Assembly: GCF_032062105.1 (NCBI RefSeq)
Contig: NW_026933693.1
Span: forward strand, 248,001 to 312,000
From: Saccostrea cucullata
Taxonomy: Eukaryota
Direction: 5' to 3'
Length of the DNA: 64,000 nucleotides
Position numbers and translations under genes: made by a program. Under the pieces are notes generated by a model. That model was not told where the DNA came from, made no database searches, and saw nothing but the letters and a program-made list of their open reading frames with translations. Every line of letters starts with the position of its first letter. Position 1 is the first letter of the stretch. Shown piece after piece: positions 26,870-57,452 of this stretch.

Positions 26870-29800
26870 CTAATCATCAGCCATCTCACGCCTACGTCTT
26901 CTCCTCCTCTCCGCAGCACTCTCTACCTCTGTGGAATCTGCGTCTTCCTTGGCCTTCCTCTCCTCGCGGCGTCTGCGGCGGCGTTCCTCCAGACTGTCCT
27001 CGGCCGGTTCTGAGGCTGTCTCGGCAGCTTCCTTTGCCTCTCTTTCTTTCCTCCTCCTCCTTCTTCTGGCCTCCATTGAGTCATCATCTTCATCTTCCTC
27101 CTGAGCTGCCTTTGTTTCTGGCACCGGGCTTGGTTCCTTTGGCTCCTCCACAACTGCTGGTTTCTTCTTCTTACCAATATCATCATCATCTTTACCAATC
27201 TGTGCCCAAAAATCTACTTCTTCTTCCTTCTCCTCAGTTTTTGCCTCCTCTTTCACTTCTTCTTTGGGTGGTTCCTCTTCCTTGACTGGCTCTTGCTCCT
27301 CTTTGGCTGGTTCCTCCTCCTTGACAGGTTCTGGCTCTTTGACTGGTTCCTCTTCCTTGACTGGTTCCTCTACCTTGACTGGTTCTGGTTCCTCTTTAGC
27401 TGGTTCCTCTTCCTTTACTGGTTCATCCTCTTTAGTTTCTTTGACATCCTTTTAAATGCATAAAAAATCTTTAAATACTGGACAATGATTTAGGTCACTG
27501 ATACTTCTACACAATACTTTTAGAATTTGCCTCTAATCTGATTGAAAACCCAAATAAAATGTTATTTTGGCCCACTAAATCACAAAATAAATAGAACCTT
27601 GAGGAACTTTATATCTTACATCAGGTTGAGAAACTGCCTCCTCTTTTTCCTGGCGGGTGAAAATTAAGTCAATGACATCAGAAAAATAGTACCTTTACAA
27701 AGGCTACCATAAATTGAAATAATTGCATTTCCAATTTTCAGATTTTAATTTTAAGAAACTGTTTAATTGCCACAACTTGGATTTTGGAAAAAGACATCTG
27801 TATACTCTGACAATCTAAATCCACACAGATTCAACTCTACTAGACATTTATCAAATAAAAGAGACACATAGAAATCACACCATGCCACTTACGACAACCT
27901 GTCTTCATCAGAACTGCTGGCTTAGTTGCCTACCATTACAGAAGGAATTTTTTTCCCCATTTTTGATTATGAACAAATGTAAATCATACAAACAAAATCA
28001 GTACTGATTAGTACACAAACTGTACAAATTTACTATACCATTCTTCACTTAATATACACAGAAACGTAACATATAAATCAAAGCAAAAGTCCTACATTAA
28101 CACTCAATGCATTCCCAATCTGAGCTACAATTTCAACTTCCTATTTTGTCAGTCATTGTTTTATTGAACTTCACTTCATGCATGCCATTCAAAGGCACAA
28201 GTACATGCAACCCTCTTACACTAAAAAGGAGATTCTTAAACCAGAACTTCAATATGTACCTCTCTTAATAAATAATAATGTTTTTATTCATGTCATCAGT
28301 CACTTACATTATCTTCTGTTATTATAAGTGCTCCAGTTTCCTGTCAACAGTTTTAAAATGTTCACTGAACACAAATACAATGTAACAAAGTCAAAATAAC
28401 AAGCATTATCCACTAAGAATTTAAATTACTTCCTTTATTCAGTACAACACAATCCTTCTCATCTTTCTTTTTTTGTTTTCATCTGCCTTTAACTTTCACC
28501 CCCACACCCACCCACCCCCCTTAAAGGGAGTAAACAATAGTTTTACTATGAGTAACAGAACCTATAGATTCCCCAGTATGAATACTAGCCTAATCACTTA
28601 CTTCAGATTTCTCCTCTACAGATGTTTCCTGTAACAAGCAACATATCCAATCATCAGCGAGACTGATAATATAAGTATTTCTCTTTAAACAATCTTCCTC
28701 CCCTTTTTTTACTCAAACACTACCAGCAACTATCATTAGGTTTACTTTGCTTTATTATGTGTACTCCTATCTGAAATCAAATAATTTTGGCTAACCCTTT
28801 CTTTACAGTTTTCTGAAAACTGATACCGTTATTTTTTTTTTTTTTTTTTACATCAAAGTTACGGACACCTTAATCATGCCTACTATAGTGTCTTGCTACC
28901 AAAACATTTCACCCCAAATCAGTCCACTTACTTCAGAAGGTGCTGCATCTTGCTTTGTTTCCTAGTACAGTAAAACACAAAGCAAATTATTCATGCTGTC
29001 CAACATCAAGTTTTCTAAGCTTCACTGACTTTGCAAATGCCAAAAAAACCCCCCAAAAACAAGCATTTACTTGTTTTCGGAAATTAACTTCACAATTTAA
29101 AAATAATCTCCAAAACTGGCATGCCACTTACAGCTGTTTCTTCTTTGTCTACCTCCTCAGTTTCCTATCATAAAATGTTAACCTTGTAACTCAATACATG
29201 CAGCTTAGCTTGCAGCTCAACTTTTATTCACAACTTTGTAACTTAATTTCCAGTTTACAAAAAAGCTGGATAAAATCCAACAAACTTACAACATCATCCA
29301 AGACAAGAACAGCCTCTGCGTCCGTTTCTTTGCCATCCTAAAAATCAGCGACCAATAATCATGCCATGTGTGACCAAGCTATATAGCAAACAGCAGTTAA
29401 TAACACTATTAAATAAATCAAATATCAAGACCTTGTTCACTTACATCAGTTGCCACAACAACAGTTTCTTCTGCAGCCTGGTCACTTTCCTAGCATAGGT
29501 ACAATATTCATGTATTTCAAATGGAATAAGACTACAAACAGCGACATAGCTCTACTTGAGCATGGTTAAAATATACATTTACAATACTGCATTACATGTA
29601 GCTAGAAAGTTTACAACCACTAACTTCAGTTAGCAATTTCTATTTTTCGTTCAACTAAAACCAATGACCTGTAGGACATAACTTACTTCTGTCTTGACCT
29701 CTGATTTTTCTCCCTACAACAACAAATCAATGACCACTTTACAGTATAACCTGTACAACTATTAATCCCTACTGGTATATCTCATAAAGAAAGCACTAAA

Positions 29801-37255: not shown

Positions 37256-40200
37256 ATGTCGGACTATGATTACAGCGATTCCTTTATCAGCGACGAGGAT
37301 GATGCCCCAAGAGCAACCAAAAGTACGGGGGGCAGGAACTTCAGGAAGTACAAACCAGGTAAAAATATACATAGTGTCAGTAATAGTATATAGCAGGGGG
37401 CAGGAACTTTAGGAAGTATAAGCCAGGTAAAAATATACATAGTGTTTTTATAAAGCATTCATACAGGGGGCAGGAACTTTGGGAAGTTTAAACCAGGTAA
37501 AATATACATATAAACAGTCAGTAATGAGTATATACTGTAGAAGCACACATTTTCATGGAGATCAGATTTTGTTCATTTGTCATCTAAAAAGGTTTCTTCT
37601 GCATTAAATTTCATTGTTTCAAAATTAAGTTACTCGATACACTCAACTTTATGAGTGTGTTGGTGATACAGGCCGTTGGATAAACTTATGCTTTATCAAC
37701 GGGTAGATGCTTTATCAATAGCACTTCCGGTTTTGACACGATCCCTCGCTTCAAAATTTTATTTGAAACTTTTATTTGTGATCCCTATTATTGCCCTAAT
37801 AAAATGAATGGTAAAGAGCGATAATATCGTTAAAAGCCAGAAAAAGACTCGTATATGTCAAAGAAATGTCTTAATCATTTTATCAAGGAACCTGTATTGG
37901 CTACTTGAAGACATATGTTACCCCCCCCCCCCCCCCTTTTAAATCGTTTTCGGAGAAAGTAAAGGCTTGCAGTTAAGTTGTTGTTATAAGATTCCTTTAA
38001 CATCTTCAATAAGACTTTCTTATATTACCCGGTATACTACGTATGCCTACCTAGTAATGTAGGTGTAACTTACCATGGATCAACAATGAATCTACAAGTA
38101 GGCCCCTAGCCTTGCCTATCACGTTTTGTACTGCCATCGTCCAAAGAGTTCATTTTCATGATCCAATGGTCCTTACAACTTTCAGTCAGAAGTCTGTTTG
38201 ATGTAAAGCTCCAGCAATTGTCACATAATGTTTTCAAAGATGCAGATAGCAAAAATTTTAAATTATGAATCCGATCTACTTTCTTTTGAGGTATGTCAAC
38301 ATCAACGGTGCTACGTCATCAAGTTATACGTCATCAATTTGAATTACCAATCATTCATGTAGTTTGGCAGGGGAAGTCTCAAAGTTTTGTTAAAACGAAA
38401 GTCCTTTGAGATAAAGAGAACATCTATAATTGTGTGATTTGATATTGGCTTTATCCAACTCGCCTCGCGAATATATACACCATTTCAACTCGTTGGATAA
38501 AGCCAATATCAAATCACACAATATAGATATCCTCTATATACCCTTGTGATGAAGGATTTTTTGACATTTTAAGAATAATTTCTTTGTTCATAGCAGAATA
38601 AAATCATTCAGGTTAATAATAAAAATGTCTAGACGCTTATGTATGATATGTAAAGACGAGGAAGTACGTATTTAAAGTTTCTGTACTTTTTTGTTGTTGT
38701 TAAAACTCGTTTAAAATAACATTTTTTTGTTGTAAATTTAACACTTGCAGTCGTAACCACTCTACTGTTTAGGTTAATATTTTTTGTAAGTAATTTATTT
38801 TCTAGCTTTTGCACTTATATCAGATTTGAACAAAAGTAGAAAGAAAGAAATTTGAATTTAAATCTTAAGAATGATCACAATATACAAGATGAATTTTTCA
38901 TCTATATCATTTATGTTATTATTGTTAACCATTTAAAATTCAGACAAATAGGATTAAAATCATTTTCTTCAATCAATATTCAATTGTATGAACATAAATA
39001 AGTGAAGTTCCTTTTGAAAGATTGTTGTCATAAAAATATTAAAATTTAAACTTCTAAGTGGCATAAATAGAATTATCAAAGTCCAGATAATTCAGATTAA
39101 TCAAAACAATCAAATCTTAAATCTTTTATGTAAATACTCATCTATTCTCTAAGTTTGTCCTAATTGTTAGATTGTTTTTTTTCTTATTAGTTGAAATGAT
39201 TTATTTAAAATTAGTTCAGTAATGAATATTATACCTAGCTTCTGTAGTTTCAAGTGAACAAGTTTTATAAACTTTCCGTTACACCCTTTCCTCTCCACTA
39301 ACTTATTAAAAAAAAAAAAAGTACAAAATTAGAAGCATGTATTTGTAAAGAATAAGTTATCAAAAACATCCATCTTTTAATAATTGAAATAAAACTATTG
39401 TCATCACCACTGTTAGCACTGCCATTTATTGAGTATAGAGTAAATCAGTAGTTCTGATAAGGGGCAGATAAACTGTGAGATTTTTGTTTATATCCATTAG
39501 CCCATTGACCTTATGTTTTAGCAATTACCTGTGTGTAATGTACAATTTTTTCGGTCAATTTAAAAAGCCCATTGTCTTGTTTATTTAGTGTGGGTACAGA
39601 CACAATGATTGCAGTGGGGCATTACGCATTTCTCCTTATAACTATGTTTATGGCTTTCTTAAGACAATGCAAAAATCGATCAATAGTGGCTTCTCGTTAA
39701 ACAAAAGATTTGTAATTTATTTTTAATGGCAATTTTTTTTAAACCTGCAAATGGTGCTGCAGCCAGTTTGATTGGATACGCTTTTTACTATGTAATATGG
39801 CACATTAATTGGGATACGCTTTTTACTCCATGTTTCATGTGTGATATGGTACATCTGTTAATGAATTTGACATACATTCCAAACAGTTGACATTTGTGGA
39901 TGATCTCACTAATTTCATTGGTTGTAGTTTATAGATATTGAGTACATTGTGTTCCAGCAGTGTGTAGTCTCATTGGAAAATAGATGCAAAGAAATCCGAG
40001 TGTTAATTAAAACTCAAGGATTTAAAAAAAAACTTTTTATCATTTTGTTCAGCAAATGAAATTTTAAAAATGGCATTACATGTACTTTCAAGAGGAGATA
40101 GTTTACCAAACAGTAAGTAATTTAATGTTTATAGGGGTATTGTGACTGCAGCATTTTTTTAAAATCTAAATAAAAATGTCAATTATGTCTATATTTACGT

Positions 40201-43200
40201 CATGTTTTCAGATTCCAAGAGTCAAACATTTACTGAAGTCTACTATCCTAAAAAGAAAGGTGAAACTAGACTTAACAAGCTTACAATGTGGTGTGGCCTT
40301 TATGCTTGAATATGTATACCCATTTAAAGCTATGTTTTCTAAAAAACTTACTTATGCCAAAACATTATCCATTACACCTGTAGATATGAGTATGAGGAGG
40401 AATGCCTATAAGACATGTTTGAGTAACCTGTTTATATGAATCACATGGAGTTGCATGCTGTCAGTATACACTGTCACTCAGATCACCAAATGCATGCCTC
40501 TGTAGTCCTTATTGAATAACTCTGGTTAAATGGGTTAGATTATCGTTACATACCACATAAGTTTTAGGCCATAACATTTTAGATTATAAGGGATTTGAAA
40601 TTATCAGTTTTCCTCTCTGGCTTTCTTCCTTCCATAGCCATTGAAAAGAATTTCCTGATATCTAAGTACAACTGTTAAGACTACTTGATATCTTAAAGTC
40701 TGTACCGTTTTCAGATGGGTCCCTTGATCTTTCTTATCCTATTTCCTCATTGTACTTTGTAGGTAGCATGCTACATCTTATGTTTTTCACCTGACCCTAG
40801 ATACCAATCGATCCTTTCCTATCCAAGCTTGTACATTGATCCTCTGAGATTCTTGGTCTACCTGTCTGTCTGTAAAAACTGCTTGCAAAAATCAAAAAAA
40901 CTAAGGGTACAATTCTTATTTAAGATTGTCCTGCATTGATGTTTTTTAAAAGGAAAAGCTGCTTGTATTGACTGCTTTAACTCCTGGCTGGTTGAGACAG
41001 TGTTGACTTTTTTACCAGAAGAACTTGACTTGTGGCTTGCCATCAAATCTGGGTCCATTATGCCTTAAAAAGTTTTAATATTACGAAGTTTGATTATATC
41101 TTAATTTGGTACAGAGATAAGTTGAGACAACCTAATGATTTGTCCTAAGGAATCCTCATCATAAACTAGAACCCTTTTTACTGAGTTGGCTAAAAAAGTG
41201 TCCTCTTGTAATTGCATGTAAGGAGCAAGGACACAGGGCAATAACATTTCTTGATTGACATTCAGAAATCCTCAAGGTCATCTTTGGGCCTCTATGGTAG
41301 AATACACTGTCCCTTTCTCTCAGTATCTAAATTTCAGAGTGTAAACACAATTAATCAATATTTACAAACAATCAATGTGTAATTTTACCAACCACTCAAA
41401 GCAGTATTAGTAAACATCTATTCTTTCATGGAATATATTAAAGAATGGAAGAGTTTATATTGGAAGAGGACATAACAGTTTTTGTTTATTTTTGTTGACA
41501 ATTACATCGTTGAGTATGTCTTCTACTCAATGGCTTGTTTTGTGCTTAAGCCTTTTTACTTTCTTGACTATATTTAGAAGCTAAATCATATTTATGATTC
41601 CCTTTTAAAGGCTGGCTTCAGATGCCAAATTAAAATTTCTTGTGAAAGTGACATAAATTTGTTAGAATTTTAGTAATATTAGCCCTATGTTGTGCAAAAG
41701 CTGATTTTTCATACTAATGGACTTTCCATTGAATGTCAACATTTTGATAATGGACCAGGTAAAAGTTATGGGTGCATCTATCACCAAGAAACTTAGGCTT
41801 AAATAAAGAACTTGAACAAAGGAGAAAACTCTTCTGCTTCAGATGCTGGATTTTGGCACATTTTTGTGATTAAGAATGTTTGCATGTACATCATTTTCAA
41901 AGAGATCCAGGAAGTATTTTATCTTGGTCACTGTACTCTTTGTTGAATATTGCAATTGACTGAGAGTTATTTTCATATAGTCTTTACTTCTAAGAAAGAA
42001 AGAATGGAAAAAAAGGCCACTCAAATTAATGCATTTTCAATCGGATGAAATAGGTTAGCATTGTGGCCCAAGACATCCATGTTTTTCGTTGAGTTGCCTT
42101 TCATTCATTGTCATGTTTTTGTACCTTTGACCATTAGAGCTATACATTTATCTATGAGTACATTGTATGCTGGTAGATTTCATATAAAAAATAATTTTGT
42201 TTATTTTGGGTATGGAGTTTTTTTTTAATAAACAATAATCACTAAGAGATATGAAGAATTATAAATTATCCCTAACTTGTAATTTGTGGTGTCATTGTGT
42301 ATCTTAAAATAATTAATGTGTGATAATAAATATACTTTTTTTTTTTTTTTTTTTTATTTGCATGTAACAGATTAGCATGATAATGGTGATGTGTGTAAGG
42401 ATGCAGTCTAAGAAATATAGTAGGACGAATGAAAGACTAGTCTAAATTTTGATTCTTTGAATTAATGTATAACATCTACTCTTGTTTTAAATATGAAATT
42501 TATTAATAATAAAAATTGTAATTATATAGGTATGGTTTAATCTTTTTTTACTATTCTGCCATTAACCGGTCATTTTCTATTTTTAGTTGGTGGACACAGG
42601 GGCGGCCGAGGCCGGGGTGGCAGAAATACTATGGGCCGAACATCAGTGGCCAACTCCGAACCCAAAATGGACGGCGTTGTTCAGAGAATGATGTCTGCCA
42701 AAAACCTAAAACTGAACGAACTCAGGAACCAGATCGAGGACATGCAGACAGCATTCCGGGACCTCAAAGAGGAGAACAAGCTCCTCAAGAAAATGCAGCA
42801 CCGACAAGAGAAGGCCCTCGTAAAGTACGAGGAAACCGAGGGCGAGCTTCCACAGATCATTGCCAGGCACCAAAACGAGGTGCGAACGCTGAAGGAGAAC
42901 TTACGTAAAACACGGGAGAAATACGAAAGGACGGATCGCTACCTCAGGGATGCCGAGGATGAACTTGACAAGGTCAAGGGCAAGTTAAAGCGGTACAAGT
43001 CTCTGGCCGACCAAAATAATCTGAAGGAGAGGGACGAGCTTCAGAAGGAGAACCAGAGGCTGCAGATAGAACTGGAGGAGAAGGAAATCAGGGTCAAGGT
43101 AAGGAAAAAAAGGTGTAAACAAAGGTGTATAAAAAGATAAAGAAACAAAGGTGTATGCAGGTAAAATACTGATATCAGGGAAACAAAGATGTATACAGGG

Positions 43201-46200
43201 AAAAAAAAAGATATCAGGGTAAACATAGTTGTATACAGGAAAATACAGATATCAGGGGAAACAAATGTGTTTACAGGGAAAATACAGATATCAGGGGTAA
43301 CAAAGGTGTATACAGGGAAAATACAGATATCAAAGGAAACACAAGTTTATACAAAGAAAATACTGATATCAGGGGTAACAAGGTTGTTTACATGGAATAT
43401 ACAGATTTCAGGGGTGGTAAGGGTACTAAAAGATATACCGTAAATCTGGAAACTTTTGCTGTAGATAAATTTTTAGCAAATTTGCGAGTACATTGCATTC
43501 GCAAAAATATTTTTCTTAAAAATAAATCACCGATAAGAAAATATAAACAAAGCAGTGGTCATTCGCAAAATTTTGAAACGTAAAAATTAATCAACAACAT
43601 ATTGACCCGAATTCGCAAAATAAAATTGACGTAAAAATTTCCAGATTTACGGTATGTAGAAATGTGCACAGAATTTTTAAAAAAAAAGTATTAGATGTGC
43701 TGATGTTGGTCTTTTATATAAATATGACAGGAAATGATACTTTGCTTGTAATAGATCTTAGTCTCCCAAATTATAACAATTTTTAGGCGCTTCTAAAGTT
43801 GGTAAAATCTAACGTGAAAGGGGTAGTTTTGTCAAAACTGCAGAAAATTATTTTTACAGCACTGGTTTTCTGAGGTTATTGAAGTTTAAGAACAAAACAT
43901 ATAAACACTTTTAAAAAGTGTTGGGAAAATATACATGCACCATTGAGTTATATTTTTTAAATGACAAAGTCATTTTTATATTTCAAGACTTCTGATGAAA
44001 ATTTAATCTCCTTTATAGGATATTTTTTCTTCACTGGAGGTGATGATTCCTAGAAAAGTACAGGAAAAAATTGAAATTTTAACTATCACATGTATCTAAT
44101 AGGTATTAAACCATTAGTTAGAATTGCACTTTAAATACAAACTTTTGAAAATACATGTATAGTGTGTGTGGTAAGATTGCTGTAGACAGATTGAATTGCA
44201 CTGACCTAAAACTGCTGATTTAGTTATTAACATTGATAAGGTATAAAACATTCAACATTGTCTCAATCACAAGATGAAAATGTTACATGTACTTGTCTAC
44301 TGGATATATATAGTCTATGTTATAGATCTAGCTGTTTGTTAGCATAATGTGCAATTTGTTGTGAATTTCTATGTGGTCATTTATTGTTGAACTTTATAAA
44401 TAAAGGGAGTTCACTTTACTTCATTCATTTTTTTAAACGAAATGATAAAAGAACGAGCAGCAGTTTTTATTCTCTCCTCTGTTTCTGTGGGTCTTTTTTA
44501 CCTGCCAAACACTTGAATTCTGTCCTAAACTCATAAAATTTTAGGTTTATAAAAAGTTCAAGATCAATCGCATAATCAGGACTCTCTAAGGTCTAGGTCA
44601 TATCTGATATTTAAAGTTCTACTGTAAATTGCAAGGATTATAATCAATCTTTGATTATATCAATTTCACAAACAAAATACCCACCGAAAAAACTGAGGAA
44701 ACTGTATGTACATAAATGTATGTATTTATGCCGGGAATTTCAAGCAGGGTTAGGTTTCTGTGAGGCCACAAACTTAATAAATCCATTTTGTAAAAACAAG
44801 TGTTTTTTCCTCAATTGTGCTGAATGGAGCTGTAACTCTGATAGACAAAGCTTGTGTATTTTTGCAGGATCTGGAGAAACACATTGTAAATCTGAACAAA
44901 AATCACAGGCATGAGCTGGGGATAGAAATGGCCCGGAACCGAGACCTAACCAAGCAGATGGATAGCCTCCGAGATCAGAATAATCAGCTGGAAAAACTAC
45001 TCAAGGTAATTAATAAGGCAACAGTCAAAAAAGTTAGTTAATATTTGGCTGATATGTTATTTATAGACAGGGGGATAGTATACTGTAAACGTATTACATT
45101 TAGCGGCTTGTATATTAACTTTAATAACTAGCAAATTCAGACAGCGCTAATTAAATCAAATCAACACTAACTTATTGAAAATTGAATTTTGGCCAAACAT
45201 CGTACATGCCAAATGTAATACACTTACAGAATACCATCAATTCTATATGCTTAGTCAAAATTGGTCCTCCAACTTTAAAAAAAAAATTTCCTGTAGTAGT
45301 TTTATCATTGTTAATTTTAATATCACGGTGACATTTTATTCAGCCCTTATTGATTGTAATATTATACAAACAGGAGAAAGACAAAGAACTTCAGATCAAG
45401 AATATTTACGCTAACCGTTCCCGTGCCCCTCATCGGCTTCCGGCTTCCTATGGGGGAACCCCACACGACACACCCCCACCTAAAGCAAGAAAAAGGGCAC
45501 CCTCACTGCAAGATCTGACCCCCAGGGAAAAGGTCAAGTTGTATGAGGAAAAAAGGAAAGAGGAGGAGAGAAAGCAGAAAGAGGTGGGTATTGTGTTATG
45601 AAGGGAGATAACTCTAATTGCTTTTTCTGTCATAGGAAAAGGAAAATGAGCATTGCTGATACATGTATTACTGAGGTATCTGAATGGGTGTAAAGAAGGT
45701 ATAATATAGCTGGTATTTGGATATTTATTTAGGGTTATTTTAAGAATTGTAAAGTGAAGAAGACATCTTCAAATGATCTTTTAACATTTTGGGGGGTTAT
45801 TTGAATACAATTAAAATGAATACAATACTGTAGATCAATTAATTTTTGCCACACCTTATTTTCGCGAGATAGCCAATGACTCCTGATTAGCAAGACAAAA
45901 TTTTCACGAATTCTGGCCACTGCTCTATATAATCTTAAGGAATTCTATTATATGTGAGAATAAAATTTTCGCGAGCATACCGTCTCCCGTAATTACGCGA
46001 AAATAAAGTTCTCACAAATAAAAAGTGATTTACAGTAGTAAGAGAAAGAAATTTCTTTTTGAATCTGGAAAGACAATGGCAGAGTCACATGAATAAATTA
46101 TAGTATATTTTGTAGTAGGTGAGGAAATGTATTTACTGCATGTATAGAGGTTTTGGTACTTACCGATATTATTTACTAACTGTGATATGTCTATAAGAAA

Positions 46201-49200: not shown

Positions 49201-52082
49201 ACTGAAATCACTATTTAATCTTCTCTTTATATTGGTGAAGGCCATTCTAACATTTCTTGCTCTGAAAGATACATGTAAAATATCATCTAAGCATTTTATA
49301 AGAGCAAGCTCTGAATCACGAACAAAATTTTACTAAATTGAGAAAACAATTAACTTTCAAAGACATTAGTCTGAGGGTGTTAATTATTCTGCCATTAATC
49401 AGTATTCCGTCCTGTGTTTTGTCTGTTTGCTGTGGATGTGTGTGGATTTCATTCAAAGTCTGTGTCAATATCTCTTAATTACCACGATTTGGGTGTAGTT
49501 TTTCGTATTTGTTTTTTTTTTCTTCTGTAGAACTGTAGTTAAAATGTTTTTTTTTTTTTTAAAAAGTTCATCAATTTTCTATTCATTAGTTGTGTTTGAA
49601 AACTAAACGTTTGTCTTATGCACCATGCTGTGATGTGTAGCACGTACATTCCGTAACATGAAGAATCCAGTTGATTCATTGATTTTCTGATATCTTGTCT
49701 ATGCATTATTGAACAGTGTGTGTGGGATTAATATATCTTAATTGTTCTAAGTAATTACGTGATTGACAACACAGTTGATATTTATTCAGATTGCATTAAT
49801 TACATTTTTTCCATATACAGCCTCTATTTTACAAACTTTTTTTTTTGTTACTACGTAAGGTTCATGATCAGCAGAAAGTCTAAGTCAAAAATAAATCTGA
49901 AAACCTGTCTATCAAACTAACAGGTATTGTACATGACTTTCAGAAAGAACTAGAGGAGTTTGGGGCAGCTATTGCAGATGAGGTGACAATTTTGCACACT
50001 TGGTCTTTGCATGAAAAAATGCATGATGTTTAGTTCCTGTAAAGATTCTTATGTAGAGATTTAAGTTAAACCCGATATGCTTGTTGACTTCCCTGGCAAT
50101 TGTACTCATGTTTTTTTTGGAGGGGGGATGGGGTGGGGGACTTACATTTGTTTTTTTCTGAGACGTAGCCTTTGCATGATAACTTCAATACATGTATCAA
50201 TGTTTGGTTTTGTTACGATTGTGTTTCCACTTAGCATGTTGCATTGATGCAAAGATTTAGATGAAAGATACAAAAAATTAGTTACATATGTGTCATCTAA
50301 AAAGAAAAATTACCATGTTGGAATAATGGAGTTTTGAAACAGATATTAAAAAAAATAATTTACAGGTGTTGATAATTTTTTTGAATTATGATTTTTTTGG
50401 GGGGATGGGGGATGAAGTTTGGGTAGTGATGAATCTTTAAGGCTTGTCTTATTAATATTACATTCTTTCTTTCATGATTTGATTTTTGTTTGTTGAAATT
50501 GCTTTCATTTATTTGGTTATTTCTATATTTTATATATTTTGTAGTCATTTAACTTTTTTTTTGCATTTAGATATTAACTTATTATTCATTTTAATTAATG
50601 TGAAGTTTACATGACAATAAATAATTTAATCCACTGCAACCATATTCTCAACATCTTTGATGTAATAATGGTAAATCAATAACGACCTTGATAAGTTATG
50701 ACTTCTCTATATATGACATTTGCATGCCATACAAAATCAATTACTGTTCATTTGCCCTTGGATGTGGATTAATGATGTGTGATGCGATAAATTTCATTTA
50801 TTCAAAGAAGATGCTGAGTCACAATGTATAATACTATCTTTACATTTCACAGCAACAAGAGAAAAGTCGGAGGGAAAAAGAAGAGAAAGAACGTGAAGAA
50901 ATGGAAAGGAGATTAAATCAGGAGCGAGAAGAAAAAGAACGCAGAGAGTGGGAGAGACGAGATCGAGAAAGAAGAGAGCGGGAAGAAAGAGAGCGACAGG
51001 AGGAAGAGAGGCGGAAAAACGAAGAGGCGGACTGGAAATTAACGCTGGAAAAAGAGAGGCTCAAACACGAGCAGGAACAGAGAGATAACGAAGCGAGGCG
51101 GCGAGAGGATCAGCAGCGGCGTGAGCGGCAGGAACAGGAACGCAGGGACCGTGAAAGACAGGAGCAGGAGCGCAGGGCCAGGGAGGAGCGAGAGAGAGAA
51201 GAGATGGATGAAAAACTACAGGCAGAACGGAAGAAAAAGGACGATCTGTTAGCAAAGTTAAAGGATATTGATGAAGGAAAGAATAAGAGCAAGGGCCCCG
51301 AGAAGAAGGAGGTGGATACATTCTTTGTTACGTCAGGAAACGTGGATGTTGGGGATAAGAAAACAGACAAAAATAAGAAAAAGGAGAAGGAACCCGACAA
51401 TTTCTTGTTTTCTGCAAGTCGGAAGGACAGTGATGGGGGCCTAGGATCAGCCTCCAGTAAAAGTAGCTACACGTTTTCTAAACCAATTGAAAATATGCAT
51501 TCAGGCAAACCGGCAAGAGATGATGTGACTGTTCCATATATTGAAAAGAAGAAACAACAGAAGGCTCAGGAAGATGTGGATGAATTTGGTGGATACATGC
51601 CGTCATTCTCCAGCAACAAAACAACATCGAAAACGACAAAGAAAAGTGGAGGAATTGTGTTCAATGACGACTTTTTGTCATCGAAACCTCCACCAAAAAA
51701 GACAAATAAAAAGAGTGATTTAATGTCAGATCTATTCGGCAAGCAAACAAAAACTACTAGTCAAAATATAGATGACGATGATATCTTTAAGCCATCCACA
51801 ACTAAGAAAACAACCACCGTGAATTCATCTAATAAGAGTTCTTTCCCTTGGGATGACGATGATTCAAAAACTACAGCAAAGAAACCTGCCACAAAGCGTG
51901 AGAATTCCACCAGCGCGTTATTCGGAGGTGGAAGTGCTCTCATTGATGATGACTTTTCTACAAAAGACTCCTCTAAAATGTTACCAAGGCGCCCGCGGCA
52001 GACAACCACCACATTCCAGGCCAGGCCCGCGGTGACTGCGGTAGATCATTATGATGACGATATTGAGGAGGTTATTCTGTAA
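37256..52082 (+). CDS. LCA5: Lebercilin (LCA5/LCA5L family) ciliary coiled-coil protein, ~840 aa
   Basis: Exons 37256-37358, 42587-43098, 44868-45005, 45374-45583, 46269-46391, 48312-48488, 49944-49982, 50853-52082, with consistent phases. Motifs RMMSAKNLKLNELRNQ, ENKLLKKMQHRQEKAL.KYE..E.ELPQII.RH.NEVR.LK and EKDKELQIKNIYANR, plus C-terminal DDIEEVIL, match lebercilin as I recall it. Confidence 0.88.
37329..37510 (+). repeat. Three ~69-bp tandem copies of the LCA5 exon-end/donor junction
   Basis: ggggcaggaactt..ggaagt..aa.ccag|gtaaaa..atacat at 37329, 37397 and 37467. Confidence 0.9.
38430..38521. repeat. Hairpin with 29-bp perfect stem, probably the end of an interspersed element spanning ~37665-38540
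   Basis: ttgtgtgatttgatattggctttatccaa / ttggataaagccaatatcaaatcacacaa. Confidence 0.85.
43110..43425. repeat. ~39-bp minisatellite immediately after an LCA5 donor site
   Basis: About 7 copies of aaatacagatatcaggggtaacaaaggtgtatacaggga. Confidence 0.9.
43438..43652. mobile_element. TA-flanked MITE
   Basis: ta|ccgtaaatctggaaa ... tttccagatttacgg|ta. Confidence 0.8.
45828..46036. mobile_element. TA-flanked MITE (CTGTA...TACAG group)
   Basis: ta|ctgtagatca ... tgatttacag|ta, with cgcga-rich interior. Confidence 0.65.
46470..47768. mobile_element. Non-autonomous Tc1/mariner-like element (1.3 kb) containing a nested MITE
   Basis: ta|cgagggtcattcaaaaagttcgtagac ... gtctacgtattttttgaatgaccctcg|ta. 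Confidence 0.85.
47252..47468. mobile_element. Nested TA-flanked MITE
   Basis: ta|ctgtaaaccaacttttattcgcga ... tcgcgaataaaagttggtttacag|ta, 24-bp perfect TIR. Confidence 0.9.
48907..49112. mobile_element. TA-flanked MITE
   Basis: ta|ctgtagaagtacttttttcca ... tggaaaaaagtatgtctacag|ta. Confidence 0.75.
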
Positions 52083-53331
52083 TGGTTTTGTAATTTATGA
52101 AAAATGTTCTGTAGTTTAATATTTAAGGAAGAGATATTTTTCTAATTTAATACTGTATGTATGGAAAACTGTGTATAGGATCTTATTTTTTCTATAACTG
52201 CACATTTATGAAATTTGAATAACTGTCTTGCATTTTGTTTTCGTTCATTTTTCGTCAAGTGTAATTGCAAGGCAGGTCTCTTTGATTCGTTTCACTTTGT
52301 TTTATTCAAAAAAATGTTGAATGAAGCATATTACCGCTATATACTCTGTGTTACAAATTTCTATTATTAATCTTTTTCTTGAGAAAAAAATAAGGTAAAA
52401 CATAACTTATCAGATTTCACCTGTTGATATGTAATGAGAGAAAGTTTTGTGCCATTCTGTCATACTTACAATCTTTGTATGTGTTTGAGTCAGTCCATAC
52501 AAATGTTTAGATAGGAAGATAGATTTATACTGGTGCCAGGTTTTCTAGCTGTGTTGTGATGTTACAGGGTCTGTAGTGCAGATGTACTTATTTGTAGATT
52601 ATATACTCATCTCTATATTCTGTCAGGAAAGCCCCCTCCCCCCCTTCAAAGTGATCTATGGAACACCCCCAAGACACAGGTCCCCTTATACAACAATCAA
52701 TCACGTCATTCTTGGTTGTGAGTTCTAATGTGAATATTTTTCTGTATGATTTCTTATTGTGCTATATTTATTAGTGTTGGTGCATGTGAGACATGAAAAT
52801 TTATATTTCACAGTTCATCACAAAATTAGTTAGTAGAAAAAAATAAAATTCAGATTTATATATCAGCTTTAAGTATATCAGACTCATCTTTATAAAGAAC
52901 AATATTTCATAGTCCTGTTACATATTCCGCATATCCTTTATAATTCATTTATATGTTTCTCCTTTTGCTTCAGTCCAGTATCTGTGATATTGCGGTCAGT
53001 CCGTCCAATCTGTATTTAGTGATAGAGTAGCCAAATAGACCACATTGTACTTTCTTTTACAGCCAAATGTTTTTACAGTTTGTATGTATTATTTATTGTT
53101 CAAATTTTTAATTTCAATTTGAGTACTATATTTTTATTTTATTGAAATTTCTGCTTAATATCTAACTTTGAACAATCATTTTTTTTTTTATTTATAATCA
53201 TATATAATTCAAAAGAAACAAGAAATGAAAAACTTGAATTTCAGTGGATCTGAAAATCAGCCAATCACCATTGCGCGCAGTATGTTTATATATATATACA
53301 TTTGTATATATGTACTACTGGTTCCTACAGA

Positions 53332-53900
53332 GGGTTTGTTCCCGTTTTGCACACATTTTAATTACAGGTAATTAAAAAATGTGTGAAAAACGGGAATTTG
53401 ACCAGGTGATATAATTACTTAGTTGCTATAGTCTATACCATACTAAGCTTAGTAAGTATGTGAAAGGTAAACTTATAGTGAAAAAATAAGAGAATAAACA
53501 CAAAGTTAATGTATTTGATTATCTGATGATCTTAACATCTTCTTGGCTTGGGCATTATTTTCAAATTACTTCTTATTCACTATTTTCTTTATTATATGTT
53601 ATATCTTTAATTCATTTAGAATTTTATCAAGATTGAAAAGTATATATTCTTTCTTTAAGAAATTGGACTTAACAATAAATAATATTAAAGAAAAATCCAA
53701 TATTTTCCCAAAAATACATATATAGAATTTTAATAAAATGCTTATAAAATTGTATTAAACCTCTTAAGAATGCATTAAGCTAAATCAGGTATTCACAGGT
53801 AAATCCAAACCAGAAATCAGACTATAATTGCTATCAAAACACACTTCACACCTATTGTTCTATACTAATTACCAAATGTGTGCAAAACGGGAACACACCC
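53332..53900. mobile_element. MITE with 27-bp TIRs and apparent 6-bp TSD (tacaga)
   Basis: tacaga|gggtttgttcccgttttgcacacattt ... aaatgtgtgcaaaacgggaacacaccc|tacaga. Confidence 0.8.
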
Positions 53901-54289
53901 TACAGAGCAGTGTACAGACAAACTGCTCCTTTATGTCATGTGTTTGTTATTTATGTGACAGAGTTTCTCTGTTTGTATATGACTGTATAATCTTTAACAA
54001 TCCAAAGATCCTATAAATAAAGATATATTAATTATAGACATCTATCATCTTTTTATATCAATTTGAAAATGTTGTTCTGGCATAGATGTTCAGGGTAACT
54101 TCCAGCATTTTATTCCAAAGAAAATCAGCTCAGCAAAGATACCCTATATTTGACATCCTAACGTTTTTGAACTAGAGATCTTCCTAGATTTTAAGATGCT
54201 GGAGGTTTAAGATCGAAACATATATATACAGCACACAAATTAAAAGACATTATATTATCTAACCAGGTGACTTTTAAGAATTTGTATGA

Positions 54290-54680
54290 TCTGTTCTGCA
54301 GTCTAGACTGGGTAACACTAAGAAGTGACACTGAGAGGTTATAGTTTCTGTAATACAGCCTAGACTAGGTTACACTACAAGTTGTAGGGTCGGTGATACA
54401 GCCTAGATCAGGCTACTCTAAAAAGTTGTAGATTCTGTATTACAGCTTAGTCCATATTACACAAAGAAGTTGTAGATTCTGTATTACAGCTTAGTCCATA
54501 TTACACAAAGAAGTTGTAGATTCTGTATTACAGCTTAGTCCATATTACACAAAGAAGTTGTAGATTCTGTATTACAGCTTAGTCCATATTACACAAAGAA
54601 GTTGTAGATTTTGAACTAATAAAGCCTAGACCATATCACACAGATATTATTGGTACTGTAATTTAGCCTAGATCAGACCC
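54290..54680. repeat. 44-bp minisatellite: four identical core copies with diverged flanking copies
   Basis: aagttgtagattctgtattacagcttagtccatattacacaaag at 54423, 54467, 54511 and 54555. Confidence 0.95.
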
Positions 54681-55523
54681 CAAGACCATAAAATGTGAAC
54701 AGACTTGTCAGAGTCAAAATTTCACATCAGTATAATTTTTGAAAAACCAAAACAAACCATAAGTTTTAATTTTTTTCACATATTTTAAATGGAACTCAAT
54801 GTATTCAAAATCAAAATTTGACTTGGTTTGATCTCAATTTATGGTCTTGGGACCAAGTTGCAGGCCATGGGTTGAATAGTTTATAGACTCTACACTTTTA
54901 CCAAAGATGGACTTTTAAAAAGCAGTTACTAATAATGAGTAGTACAAAACCATCAATTCAAAATTAGTTGTCAATTTTCAGAGATATTACCAGTTAATAT
55001 AACCATATCTTTCTTTGCATGAGCAACATTAGATATTATTCCCTCTTCTACAGATATTTTAAATTTGCTCATTCACATATCATGAAATTAAATGATAAAC
55101 AAATATTCTCTCAATATATTTTTTTATTTGAGTTAAAAATCTCCAACAATATACTGAAGTGTCCATACAAAAGCAAAACTTGCAAGCCAATGTTAATTGA
55201 GAGAAACATAAGGCAGTTTGCCAGGCAAGGTAAATTTTATTCAACAGCATATTTTATTTTTCAGAAATTTGTTGAAAATCGTTATAGGAAGGACAAAAAA
55301 TAATTAAACGTACATTAAAGATTTTCAAGGGAAAAATATTTATAAACTTGTATTCTTATGATTAAAGGAAATAATTTATGGAGGCAATCAGTAGCCATAA
55401 CTCTTCAACTTTGATTGTCCATCCAGTTCACCGTAGACACAATGTAATATCAAATCCAACATTAAATACTGTACTCTGGCAGTGTGTTAGTACCCTCCAT
55501 GACTAGGTTCAGTCTATATAAGA

Positions 55524-57452
55524 TCAGTCTAGCGGGATGTCATGAGGTTGTCTCTCAGTGGTAGGAATCTGTTGTTTTTCTTCCTCTGATTTTCTTAGAG
55601 ACCACAGGCTGGTGAATTTGTTTACAGCAGTACTACACGCTATGATCCAACAGGTCACTCCTAACCCACCTACAACAACCAAATGTCTAGTTCAAAGTTT
55701 TAAATAAAATTGACGAGAAATCAACATCATTTACTCATGAATAATGCTGTCATTGCTAGAGTCTGTCATATGTAGCACAGATAACTATATGGCATTTGTT
55801 ATTAAATTTCATAATAAATCATTTTCTTTTACTTACCAGGAATCCCTGTTGGAAAAGATACAATTTTATGAAATGGGTAAAACCAGTTCTCTGGGAACAT
55901 CAGCAATGGCTCGCTTCTGTTTGTTATAATAATCACCAACATTGTTAACGCCTAAAAAGAAGTATGATATTGTCAATGGAGGAATGAAATTCAATCTCCA
56001 CAAAAGTAGCAATGAAAACTATTCAATGAAGTCTTCTAATTAAGTACAGTGTTTTAATTATGGGGTAATATGATGTTTCTTTTTTTGAATTTTCAGTTTT
56101 ATTGCATATAACAGGCATGATCAAATAACTTCTATCATTTAATACAGGATTTACCCCTAAAATGTCTTTAGAAACAGTAATTTCTCTTAAACTTTTGCAT
56201 TTCAAAGGTTAACCATATCAATATTAAAAAAGGTTTACCTGAACAACATATATTCCTACTTTTACTCCTATATTAATGACAGCTATTTTGTTATTACGTG
56301 CTGTAGCTGTGAAGAGAAAATTAAAAGTGGTTAAAACTATCTATCATAAATTGCTCTATCTACTGTATAGGTTGTTAAATAATTTTGAGAAATACCTACC
56401 TAATCGTTTAATTTCTGCTGTGTGCTTATCTATTTTACGCTGTATCTTGGCATACTTGGCAAATTCCTCAGTCATACTTATTGTATCTTGTTCTAACTTA
56501 AGATCTTTGATTTCTGAGCGTATAATCATTTCACCATCTGTAACTTTGTAGACAATTTTACTTATCTGAAATGCATAAGCAAAAATTATAATCCAATAAA
56601 ACTCTTAAAATATTCACATAAAATCAGATATGATTACATGGTGTATGAAGTTTTAAATTATAAACTATAATAGCTGCTGATGACTGTCAACATTAACTTT
56701 AAAACCACTCGTTAATTAACCTTCATATGAAAAACATGAAATTTAATTTACAATGACCAAGGACGCAAAATATGCACAGTGATGCTAGTCATCATAATCC
56801 AAAATTAAATAATTAAAATCAAAACATCATTTACTAACAAGATTCAGTTTTAGGAGGATGTCTACTCTTAACCAGAGTCTTGATTACAAGATGACTTCTG
56901 CCTTTCGGTAACAAGTTGATATATTGGGTGTGATTTGACTTGGTTACGAATACAGGTTTCAAGTTTACCAAAATCCTTATTGAGAAAAATCTTTTTTTCT
57001 GTAAAATGTCAAATTCTGAGGGTAGGTCTACCACCTTTCTGGCTAACACTCTTCTGCGTACAATGTATGCCACTAACTTATAATCATTAATTAGGTAAAT
57101 TACAGTCAAATCTTGTTATCATGAATTTGATGGAACTGCATGAGTAAAACTTTGGGATTTTCAGAGGTTCAGGATATTGAGGTAAATACATGTATATATA
57201 AGGAAAAAGTGATCGTGTGTTAAGATTCAAGTACGTAGCATACATTTTGAGCTTAATGCCCTTGATCTGTTGATATTTGTTCCGATTCACAAAGAGTTGA
57301 TTATTCTTGATGCTACAAATTACAAAATACAAATGGTGAGAAACAAGAAATACACATCGTTAAATACTTACTAAAACTGATATTTTGTGGGAATATTTAG
57401 GTAAAAATTGAAACAGTATTACAGCAATAAATATAAATATCATAAGATACAT
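55524..57452 (-). CDS. GET1: Guided entry of tail-anchored proteins factor 1 (WRB/CHD5); 5 exons, ~191 aa
   Basis: Exons 57452-57372 (MYLMIFIFIAVILFQFLPKYSHKISVL), 56565-56400 (...RSEIKDLKLEQDTISMTEEFAKYAKIQRKIDK...), 56306-56239, 55951-55837 (EPLLMFPENWFYPFHKIVSFPTGIP), 55669-55524 (GGLGVTCWIIAC...*). Matches WRB motifs MxxEFAxYAxxxRKI, PxxWxxP, FPT and GG.G.TCW. Missed by the ORF track. Confidence 0.9.

What the first reader, a model, noticed from the sequence alone, without database searches (positions are those of the whole stretch)
26870..57452. SH3BGR<-->LCA5-><-GET1 matches the human chr21q22 gene trio in order and orientation
Seen: SH3BGR (-) is head-to-head with lebercilin (+), which is tail-to-tail with GET1/WRB (-). 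Established (from memory): human chr21q22.2 has GET1(WRB), LCA5L and SH3BGR adjacent with this same geometry, and the paralogs LCA5 and SH3BGRL2 are neighbours on 6q14. Inference: this is a three-gene microsynteny kept since the bilaterian ancestor, among functionally unrelated genes in a region studied for Down-syndrome heart defects. It may be held together by the shared promoter or by enhancers inside LCA5 introns.
Basis: partly seen in the sequence, partly recalled or inferred. Interest (0 to 1): 0.8.

Follow-up and report, generated by a model that had tools for sequence, protein, structure and literature searches.

The report
Ancient SH3BGR–LCA5–GET1 gene trio
A mollusc genome carries the genes SH3BGR, LCA5 (lebercilin) and GET1/WRB side by side in the layout reported for human chromosome 21, and the first two start about 65 bases apart from one shared two-way promoter; it is a clean example of an already well-described kind of ancient gene-neighbourhood conservation.

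Summary
Pfam identifies SH3BGR (-), lebercilin/LCA5 (+) and CHD5/GET1 (-) exons, head-to-head then tail-to-tail. RNA reads confirm the SH3BGR introns.

The genes have the claimed family identities. The SH3BGR gene is of the SH3BGR/SH3BGRL/SH3BGRL2 type, and a separate SH3BGRL3-type gene lies on another contig. LCA5 is single-copy, carries the conserved C-terminal DDDIEEVxL motif and groups with mollusc sequences. GET1 is single-copy.

The full trio in the same geometry is also found in Haliotis and Aplysia. SH3BGR<->LCA5 alone is found in Pecten, Owenia and Saccoglossus, and LCA5-><-GET1 alone in amphioxus. Neither neighbour lies within 10 kb in Diadema or lamprey. Papers confirm the human adjacency, but the strand of LCA5L rests on memory.

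RNA places the two divergent transcript starts at most about 65 bp apart, which makes a bidirectional promoter the most likely constraint on that pair. The GET1 link is looser.

This is one more conserved ancestral microsyntenic block of the kind catalogued by Irimia et al. 2012 (595 such pairs). Their gene list could not be read, so prior listing is likely but unverified. Non-bilaterians were not tested.

The parts
25340..25406 (-). SH3BGR terminal exon of the dominant transcript (GKSEDE-stop; TAA at 25388-25386; AATAAA overlaps the stop; the 3' end is approximate)
   Evidence: About 100 RNA reads per run run on from exon 3 into a sequence that matches only 25379-25405. Sequence and acceptor were read. 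The C-terminus equals that of relative P0005.
26873..27451 (-). Glu-rich open frame (193 aa, E+D 38%), putative alternative terminal exon of a long SH3BGR isoform
   Evidence: Aplysia has a 657-aa E/K-rich frame in the same position of its SH3BGR gene. It is not used by the dominant transcript. Its use as an exon is inferred.
31145..31396 (-). Second Glu-rich open frame, putative cassette exon of SH3BGR
   Evidence: No RNA evidence was obtained here. Its use as an exon is inferred.
32776..32880 (-). SH3BGR exon 3
   Evidence: tblastn to P0005/P0006; splice joint 32879|33163 with CT..AC ends.
33164..33349 (-). SH3BGR exon 2, core of the thioredoxin-like domain
   Evidence: PF04908 at 62.8 bits. 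Best solved relatives are SH3BGRL/SH3BGRL2 at 1.5e-11. Joints are confirmed.
35421..35603 (-). SH3BGR exon 1 (ATG at 35465; the 5' end of the transcript is near 35600-35603)
   Evidence: Joint 33349|35421; RNA contigs reach 35600; molecule ends pile up at 35603; tblastn.
35604..35668 (.). Core of the bidirectional promoter between the two divergent transcript starts
   Evidence: One search gives the transcript limits and the sequence. Two CCGGAA (ETS-type) sites and two TGACGT (CRE-type) sites lie within 35550-35720, against 0.05 and 0.08 expected from window density.
35669..35823 (+). LCA5 non-coding first exon (observed minimum extent)
   Evidence: RNA contigs 35669-35823 and 35697-35823 are spliced GT..AG to 37221, plus 5 raw spliced reads.
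37221..37358 (+). LCA5 exon 2 with the start codon at 37256 (MSDYDYSDSF...)
   Evidence: The acidic DYDYSDSF N-terminus is shared with Mytilus and Haliotis LCA5.
42631..43140 (+). Open frame holding the main lebercilin-domain exon of LCA5
   Evidence: PF15619 at 137.8 bits, profile positions 1-149 of 193; 478 relatives found.
44817..45601 (+). Two further LCA5 coding pieces (end of the lebercilin domain; KELQIKNIY motif)
   Evidence: PF15619 positions 139-188; tblastn matches in Pecten, Haliotis, Aplysia and Saccoglossus.
50901..52082 (+). LCA5 last exon, ending in DDDIEEVIL-stop
   Evidence: The C-terminal motif is shared with LCA5 proteins from molluscs to vertebrates. tblastn 8.8e-56 to Pecten.
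55524..55691 (-). GET1 last exon (GGLGVTCWII... transmembrane segment, then stop)
   Evidence: weak tblastn match to the Haliotis CHD5 gene.
55832..56529 (-). GET1 exons 2-4 (coiled coil and second transmembrane region)
   Evidence: PF04420 at 2e-11 and at 52.8 bits over positions 32-134; tblastn to the amphioxus CHD5 gene.
57363..57452 (-). Putative GET1 exon 1 with the ATG at 57452
   Evidence: A hydrophobic open frame in the expected place. No homology or RNA evidence was obtained. Inferred.

Best explanation
The window, from a mollusc and probably a bivalve, carries an ancestral bilaterian gene block. The block consists of the single pro-ortholog of vertebrate SH3BGR/SH3BGRL/SH3BGRL2, the single LCA5/LCA5L-family gene, and GET1/WRB. 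SH3BGR and LCA5 are transcribed divergently from one compact bidirectional promoter, with transcript starts at most about 65 bp apart. A breakpoint between them would take the promoter away from one gene, and this is the likely reason the pair has survived in most lineages and in two human paralogous copies. GET1 sits tail-to-tail a few kb beyond LCA5. It is retained less often, probably through short distance and slow rearrangement, perhaps helped by a shared regulatory domain. Shown here: gene identities, geometry, the distribution of the adjacencies across phyla, and the closeness of the two transcript starts. Inferred: that the shared promoter is the selective constraint, and that the GET1 link is only weakly constrained or unconstrained.
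For: Identities: Pfam hits lie above the curated cut-offs for all three genes. The window SH3BGR exon is nearer SH3BGRL/L2 (1.5e-11) than SH3BGRL3 (8e-4), while the second genomic copy on contig C11008 shows the reverse pattern. LCA5 groups with mollusc sequences (SH-aLRT 84) inside a lophotrochozoan group (94). Distribution: the full trio occurs in Haliotis and Aplysia. SH3BGR<->LCA5 occurs in Pecten, Owenia and Saccoglossus. LCA5-><-GET1 occurs in Branchiostoma. Human adjacency, a shared eQTL and a shared TAD are reported in PMC6088800; LCA5 and SH3BGRL2 lie within 0.2-Mb duplications in PMC9276112. Promoter: SH3BGR exon 1 reaches about 35600-35603 and the LCA5 5' exon starts at or before 35669. 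Annotated head-to-head gaps are 288 bp in Aplysia, about 1 kb in Saccoglossus and 1.5 kb in Pecten. ETS-type and CRE-type motifs are enriched in these gaps. SH3BGR-LCA5 meets the four-lineage criterion for conserved pairs in PMC3514665.
Against: The block is not inviolable. Diadema has neither neighbour within 10 kb. Amphioxus has a phospholipase A2 gene in place of SH3BGR. GET1 is not within 10 kb in Pecten, Owenia, Saccoglossus or lamprey. SH3BGR RNA depth is about ten times that of LCA5 in the runs laid, so the two genes are not tightly co-expressed in level. Annotated gaps are 6-8 kb in Owenia and Haliotis. The LCA5 5' exon rests on two RNA contigs and five raw reads, and contigs cannot fix a transcript start. 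From memory, the human LCA5-SH3BGRL2 gap is tens of kb, too wide for a minimal shared promoter.
Confidence: 0.65

Rival explanations
1. Neutral survival. The block is ancestral but unconstrained, and it persists simply because intergenic distances are short and because molluscs, amphioxus, hemichordates and vertebrates rearrange slowly.
For: The block is lost in Diadema and partly lost in amphioxus, Pecten, Owenia and Saccoglossus. Expression levels of SH3BGR and LCA5 are unequal. No extended synteny is seen: there is no bromodomain (BRWD-type) hit on the window's contig, and the Pecten neighbour, a Ribosomal_L24e gene, is not on it either.
Against: The head-to-head pair is kept in four major lineages and, according to the literature, in two human paralogous copies. 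Randomised gene orders gave only 0.015 such pairs per genome in PMC3514665. The two transcript starts are at most about 65 bp apart, which leaves almost no neutral target for a break.
Confidence: 0.22
2. Regulatory-block model. Enhancers inside LCA5 introns act on SH3BGR or GET1, so LCA5 is kept beside them as a bystander gene.
For: LCA5 has several introns of 2-5 kb lying between its two neighbours. In humans one SNP is an eQTL for WRB, LCA5L and SH3BGR together, and all three lie in one TAD (PMC6088800).
Against: The defining feature of such blocks is a developmental regulator gene as the target (PMC3514665). Pfam finds no transcription-factor or signalling domain in any of the three genes. 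No conserved non-coding element could be tested, and no X-box or other shared intronic motif was found.
Confidence: 0.07
3. Coincidence or independent assembly of the same neighbours in molluscs and vertebrates.
For: None was found. The only basis is that any two genomes share a few adjacent pairs by chance.
Against: The same two adjacencies, in the same orientations, occur in gastropods, a bivalve-like mollusc, a scallop, an annelid, a hemichordate and amphioxus.
Confidence: 0.01

Closest known systems
Conserved ancestral microsyntenic pairs (CAMPs) of the co-regulated 5'-5' type, Irimia et al. 2012 (PMC3514665)
   Same: The genes are non-paralogous neighbours kept in at least four major animal lineages, with conserved divergent orientation, a very short intergenic distance and a bidirectional promoter.
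   Different: This case is a three-gene block whose third member is joined tail-to-tail. Whether these particular pairs are among the published 595 could not be checked, because the supplementary tables are not held.
Human 21q22.2 GET1(WRB)-LCA5L-SH3BGR and 6q14.1 LCA5-SH3BGRL2
   Same: The same gene families are adjacent. In humans the three lie in one TAD and share an eQTL (PMC6088800). A GET1-SH3BGR read-through gene is annotated, and one SNP is intronic to both LCA5L and that read-through (PMC12147916). LCA5 and SH3BGRL2 lie within 0.2 Mb of each other (PMC9276112).
   Different: Vertebrates have duplicated copies: LCA5 and LCA5L, and SH3BGR, SH3BGRL and SH3BGRL2. The mollusc has one gene of each. 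GET1 accompanies only the chromosome 21 copy. The human strands and distances are from memory and were not tested here.
Genomic regulatory blocks (developmental gene plus bystander genes)
   Same: Unrelated genes are kept together over hundreds of millions of years.
   Different: There is no developmental regulator in the block, and no conserved intronic enhancer has been shown.
HSP60-HSP10 type bidirectional gene pairs
   Same: Divergent transcription from a shared promoter of well under 1 kb, kept over very long times (cited in PMC3514665).
   Different: HSP60 and HSP10 work together and are strongly co-expressed. SH3BGR and LCA5 have no known functional tie and differ about tenfold in RNA depth here.

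Membership tests
SH3BGR family (PF04908), SH3BGR/SH3BGRL/SH3BGRL2 subgroup | SH3BGR thioredoxin-like domain above Pfam's curated cut-off | tested here: met
   62.8 bits against a cut-off of 21; 61.5 bits in the whole-genome search.
SH3BGR family (PF04908), SH3BGR/SH3BGRL/SH3BGRL2 subgroup | Closer to SH3BGRL/SH3BGRL2 than to SH3BGRL3, with a separate SH3BGRL3-type gene elsewhere in the genome | tested here: met
   The window exon scores 1.5e-11 and 1.7e-11 against SH3BGRL/L2 versus 8e-4 against L3. The gene on contig C11008 scores 4e-13 against L3 versus 2.5e-5.
SH3BGR family (PF04908), SH3BGR/SH3BGRL/SH3BGRL2 subgroup | Glutamic-acid-rich C-terminal extension, the feature that sets SH3BGR proper apart from the SH3BGRL proteins | tested here: inconclusive
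   Glu-rich open frames lie on the right strand inside the gene, and Aplysia has a 657-aa one. The dominant transcript skips them and gives a protein of about 118 aa.
Lebercilin (LCA5/LCA5L) family | Lebercilin coiled-coil domain PF15619 above the cut-off | tested here: met
   137.8 bits against a cut-off of 34.3.
Lebercilin (LCA5/LCA5L) family | Conserved C-terminal acidic motif (D/E)(D/E)IEE(V/L)xL of LCA5-type proteins | tested here: met
   The window protein ends in DDDIEEVIL. The same ending occurs in mollusc, Lingula, amphioxus, Saccoglossus and vertebrate LCA5 proteins.
Lebercilin (LCA5/LCA5L) family | Single-copy gene that branches with the species' relatives (a pro-ortholog, not a lineage-specific paralog) | tested here: met
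   The only other strong genomic match is a haplotig-like contig whose exon products are 98% identical in protein to the window's. The tree places the window sequence among molluscs. Whether vertebrate LCA5L is sister to vertebrate LCA5 is not resolved by that tree.
Lebercilin (LCA5/LCA5L) family | Ciliary localisation and interaction with intraflagellar transport | not testable with these tools
   Needs cell biology.
GET1/WRB (PF04420, CHD5-like) | CHD5/WRB domain above the cut-off | tested here: met
   44.5 bits on one exon and 52.8 bits across exons, against a cut-off of 29.3.
GET1/WRB (PF04420, CHD5-like) | Three transmembrane segments flanking a cytosolic coiled coil | not tested
   Hydrophobic stretches and the coiled-coil exon are visible in the translations, but no topology prediction was run and the exons were not joined.
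Conserved ancestral microsyntenic pair (Irimia et al. 2012) | Non-paralogous neighbours linked in at least four major metazoan lineages | tested here: met
   SH3BGR-LCA5 is linked in molluscs, an annelid and a hemichordate, plus vertebrates from the literature.
Conserved ancestral microsyntenic pair (Irimia et al. 2012) | The same criterion applied to LCA5-GET1 | tested here: inconclusive
   Three lineages were seen: molluscs, a cephalochordate and vertebrates. [quoted passage not shown]
Conserved ancestral microsyntenic pair (Irimia et al. 2012) | Listed among the 595 published pairs | not testable with these tools
   The supplementary tables are not held, and the main text does not name these genes.
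Genomic regulatory block | Contains a developmental regulator (trans-dev) gene served by enhancers in bystander introns | tested here: not met
   Pfam finds only the SH3BGR, Lebercilin and CHD5 domains. The definition is from PMC3514665.

The most novel reading that the evidence does not exclude
The trio is a selected co-regulated unit rather than a promoter-locked pair with a passenger. On this reading one regulatory domain drives all three genes in ciliated or sensory cells. LCA5 serves photoreceptor cilia and WRB/GET1 serves ribbon-synapse sensory cells in vertebrates, and in humans one variant alters expression of all three. That shared control would then have held the block together since the bilaterian ancestor.
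Probability: 0.08. Interest if true: 0.6.

Novelty: new member of a known kind. Interest (0 to 1): 0.35.

Why it matters
The locus is a well-resolved example of ancient microsynteny, with transcript starts and gene geometry defined. Three unrelated genes keep the same order and strands from molluscs to the layout reported for humans, and a two-way promoter under 100 bp wide offers a concrete cause for one of the two links. The human copy lies in the Down-syndrome region of 21q22.2, and there GWAS and eQTL signals cannot separate GET1, LCA5L and SH3BGR. Knowing that the arrangement is ancestral and promoter-sharing helps to read those signals. It does not open a new class of phenomenon.

Tried and rejected
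- **X-box motifs.** I looked for X-box (RFX) motifs, as expected for a ciliary gene, in the head-to-head gaps of six species. None was found in the window, and there was only one loose match, in Haliotis.
- **Second copies in the same genome.** Contigs C10807 and C17615 looked at first like a duplicated block. They are short contigs collinear with the window at 78-90% DNA identity and about 98% protein identity. C10807 also contains 18 kb of low-complexity sequence at 22% GC and no SH3BGR. I read them as poor-quality haplotigs, not paralogs.
- **Extended synteny.** There is no bromodomain gene and no Ribosomal_L24e gene on the window's contig.
- **GET1 near LCA5 in Owenia and lamprey.** The 119-aa Owenia neighbour and a weak lamprey tblastn hit are not GET1.
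- **Failed or uninformative look-ups.** Look-ups of the Mytilus, Lingula and a putative fish LCA5L protein failed because those isoforms are not on record. An intronless LCA5 homolog from an ENA sample came back without DNA.
- **Literature.** Searches combining these gene names with synteny or microsynteny found nothing relevant.
- **Other searches.** Rfam found no RNA genes in the window, ARAGORN found no tRNAs, and there are no earlier scan notes for this place.
- Spliced protein models were not joined; every search was made exon by exon. No human contig was fetched, and the N runs in the Aplysia locus were left as they are.
Full report
**What is in the window**

The sequence is AT-rich (31-38% GC) with intron-split genes. 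No tRNA or Rfam RNA was found.

Pfam scans of single open frames identify three genes inside the reported range:
- An SH3BGR-family exon on the minus strand (33131-33400, PF04908, 3.6e-17).
- The lebercilin domain on the plus strand (42631-43140, PF15619, 4.3e-40, with its continuation at 44817-45041).
- A CHD5/WRB exon on the minus strand (56356-56529, PF04420, 2e-11).

The whole-genome search of the window's own assembly finds the same three places. That assembly is G000, 1.17 Gb in 23,869 contigs, and the window is C15830:248001-312000.

The best LCA5 relatives are molluscan: Mytilus, Pecten, Haliotis and Littorina at 54-58% identity over the domain exon. In a tree of 146 lebercilin domains the window sequence sits among molluscs, inside a lophotrochozoan group. 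The organism is therefore a mollusc.

**Gene structures**

SH3BGR has these exons, found by tblastn with close relatives:
- Exon 1: 35421-35603, with the ATG at 35465.
- Exon 2: 33164-33349.
- Exon 3: 32776-32880.

Both introns are confirmed by about 90-100 spliced reads in each of two oligo-dT RNA runs, and by RNA contigs from a second study.

The same reads run on from exon 3 into a sequence that occurs only at 25379-25405. There an acceptor site precedes GGC AAA TCC GAA GAT GAA TAA, which encodes GKSEDE followed by a stop. This is exactly the C-terminus of a 118-aa relative (P0005).

The Glu-rich frames at 26873-27451 and 31145-31396 are skipped in these samples. They may serve long isoforms, since Aplysia has a 657-aa E/K-rich frame in the same place and the annotated mollusc models are 492-764 aa.

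LCA5 has these parts:
- A non-coding first exon, at least 35669-35823, spliced GT..AG to 37221.
- The ATG at 37256, opening MSDYDYSDSF, an acidic N-terminus shared with other molluscs.
- The domain exon at 42.6-43.1 kb.
- Further pieces at 44.8-45.6 kb.
- A last exon at 50901-52082, ending in DDDIEEVIL. That ending is shared by LCA5 proteins from molluscs, Lingula, amphioxus, Saccoglossus and vertebrates.

GET1 has exons at 56529-56400, 56340-56227, 55951-55832 and 55691-55527, with a likely first exon carrying an ATG at 57452. That first exon is inferred only.

The two stop codons are 3.4 kb apart. The nearest poly(A) signals predict 3' ends about 2.4 kb apart.

**Orthology**

The genome holds two SH3BGR-family genes. 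The window exon matches solved SH3BGRL and SH3BGRL2 structures at about 1.5e-11 and SH3BGRL3 at only 8e-4. The gene on contig C11008 does the reverse, at 4e-13 against 2.5e-5. The window gene is thus the single counterpart of the vertebrate SH3BGR/SH3BGRL/SH3BGRL2 group.

LCA5 and GET1 are single-copy, apart from two short contigs, C10807 and C17615. These are collinear with the window at 78-90% DNA identity and about 98% protein identity, and C10807 also contains 18 kb of low-complexity filler. I take them for poor haplotigs.

In the tree, vertebrate LCA5 forms one clade. A long-branched clade of 43 sequences probably represents LCA5L; I assign it by C-termini recalled from memory, and the tools gave it no name. 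The tree does not resolve whether the two clades are sisters.

**Is the linkage old?**

I fetched the LCA5 locus with 10-kb flanks from other animals and checked the flanks in two ways: the precomputed Pfam labels, and tblastn with the window's single exons.

| Species (group) | SH3BGR (-) upstream, head-to-head | GET1/CHD5 (-) downstream, tail-to-tail |
|---|---|---|
| Haliotis cracherodii (gastropod) | yes | yes, 9.6 kb beyond LCA5 |
| Aplysia californica (gastropod) | yes, 288 bp from LCA5 | yes, 9.7 kb beyond LCA5 |
| Pecten maximus (scallop) | yes, 1.5 kb away | no; a Ribosomal_L24e gene follows instead |
| Owenia fusiformis (annelid) | yes | not within 10 kb |
| Saccoglossus kowalevskii (hemichordate) | yes, about 1 kb away | not within 10 kb |
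| Branchiostoma (amphioxus) | no; a phospholipase A2 gene lies upstream | yes, 2.2 kb beyond LCA5 |
| Diadema (sea urchin) | no | no |
| Lampetra (lamprey) | no | no |

Both adjacencies, with their orientations, therefore occur in protostomes and in deuterostomes.

For humans, papers confirm the following:
- WRB, LCA5L and SH3BGR are neighbours in one TAD, and one SNP acts as an eQTL for all three (PMC6088800).
- A GET1-SH3BGR read-through gene is annotated, and one SNP is intronic to both LCA5L and that read-through (PMC12147916).
- LCA5 and SH3BGRL2 lie within 0.2-Mb duplications at 6q14.1 (PMC9276112).

It was not tested here, and no human sequence was fetched.

Retention from the bilaterian ancestor is the only sensible reading. 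Non-bilaterians could not be sampled.

**Mechanism**

The RNA evidence puts the 5' end of SH3BGR at about 35600-35603 and the start of the LCA5 first exon at or before 35669. The two divergent transcripts thus begin no more than about 65 bp apart.

The core and its edges (35550-35720) hold two CCGGAA sites and two TGACGT sites, against 0.05 and 0.08 expected from window density. The same motif types are over-represented in the short head-to-head gaps of Pecten and Saccoglossus, and one TGACGT site occurs in Aplysia. These are generic promoter motifs and do not prove conservation.

A shared promoter of this size leaves no room for a harmless breakpoint. It matches the co-regulated 5'-5' class of conserved pairs described by Irimia et al. 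2012, whose four-lineage criterion the SH3BGR-LCA5 pair meets.

Several observations argue against a strict constraint:
- SH3BGR RNA is about tenfold deeper than LCA5 RNA.
- The annotated gaps are 6-8 kb in Owenia and Haliotis.
- Amphioxus and the sea urchin have lost the pair.

The GET1 link is seen in only three lineages and is lost more often. I consider it weakly constrained or neutral. The bystander-enhancer model fails its defining feature, because no developmental regulator is present.

**Novelty**

[quoted passage not shown] That paper's main text does not name these genes, and its tables are not held. Full-text searches combining the gene names with synteny terms found nothing. A STRING cluster that joins SH3BGR-type and lebercilin-like proteins is mentioned in PMC12147916, which hints that public resources already link them. 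I rate this a new, or at least not individually described, member of a known kind.

**Limits**

- Flanks were capped at 10 kb and look-ups at twelve, so "not within 10 kb" does not mean absent from the neighbourhood.
- Spliced proteins were never joined; all searches were made exon by exon.
- Only one 5.9-kb stretch could be laid with reads. The Glu-rich SH3BGR isoforms, the GET1 first exon and all 3' ends are therefore unverified.
- The RNA reads are mostly 90-99% identical to the assembly, so they come from a different individual or population than the assembly.

Noticed in passing
G000 contigs C10807 (33.9 kb; loci L008, L011-L013) and C17615 (6.75 kb; L009): These are second copies of LCA5 and of part of GET1. 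They are 78-90% identical to the window in DNA but about 98% identical in protein. C10807 joins window-like sequence from 39-52 kb and from 12-15 kb through 18 kb of low-complexity, homopolymer-rich sequence (GC 22%) and has no SH3BGR. It is probably an unpolished or chimeric haplotig, but a real structural variant is not excluded.
   Followed up: partly
window 25340-32880 (-): The dominant SH3BGR transcript skips the long Glu-rich frames and gives a protein of about 118 aa. The Glu-rich frames may be tissue-specific alternative exons, as in vertebrate SH3BGR.
   Followed up: partly
window 9055-12754 (+) and 14979-16595 (-): The upstream neighbours are an amino-acid transporter gene (PF01490 on four exons) and Kazal-type protease inhibitor exons (PF00050/PF07648). 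Neither matches the human 21q22 or 6q14 neighbours.
   Followed up: partly
G000:C11008:31014-31193 (L002:1498-1698): An SH3BGRL3-type paralog lies on a 351-kb contig unrelated to the window.
   Followed up: yes
window 38473-38540 and 34276-35063: A 68-nt piece in an LCA5 intron has about 50x RNA depth, with unrelated sequence on both sides in about 100 reads. A stretch of SH3BGR intron 1 has very high RNA-contig depth and many variants. Both look like pieces of expressed repeats from elsewhere in the genome.
   Followed up: no
window 32700-38600: Only about 3% of the laid raw RNA reads are 99% or more identical to the assembly, and most are 90-99% identical. The public RNA runs labelled with the same organism therefore come from a clearly different haplotype, population or sister taxon.
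   Followed up: no
ENA sample ERZ25072999, protein P0060: An apparently intronless LCA5 homolog (683 aa in a 2,052-bp gene) sits on a 1-Mb contig of an unnamed eukaryote. No SH3BGR or CHD5 label appears within 10 kb, and no DNA was returned.
   Followed up: no
window 1-320 and 36715-36885: Long (TA/TATA)-type microsatellites read as IYIYIY frames. Repeat-derived peptides such as ...SGSVDSSLFK... recur at 1760-2059 and 21095-21458.
   Followed up: no
human 21q22.2, 6q14.1 and Xq21.1 (from memory, not tested): As I recall, vertebrates have three parallel runs: BRWD1-HMGN1-GET1-LCA5L-SH3BGR, PHIP-HMGN3-LCA5-SH3BGRL2 and BRWD3-HMGN5-SH3BGRL. This would make the block part of a larger duplicated segment. 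No bromodomain gene lies on the window's contig.
   Followed up: partly
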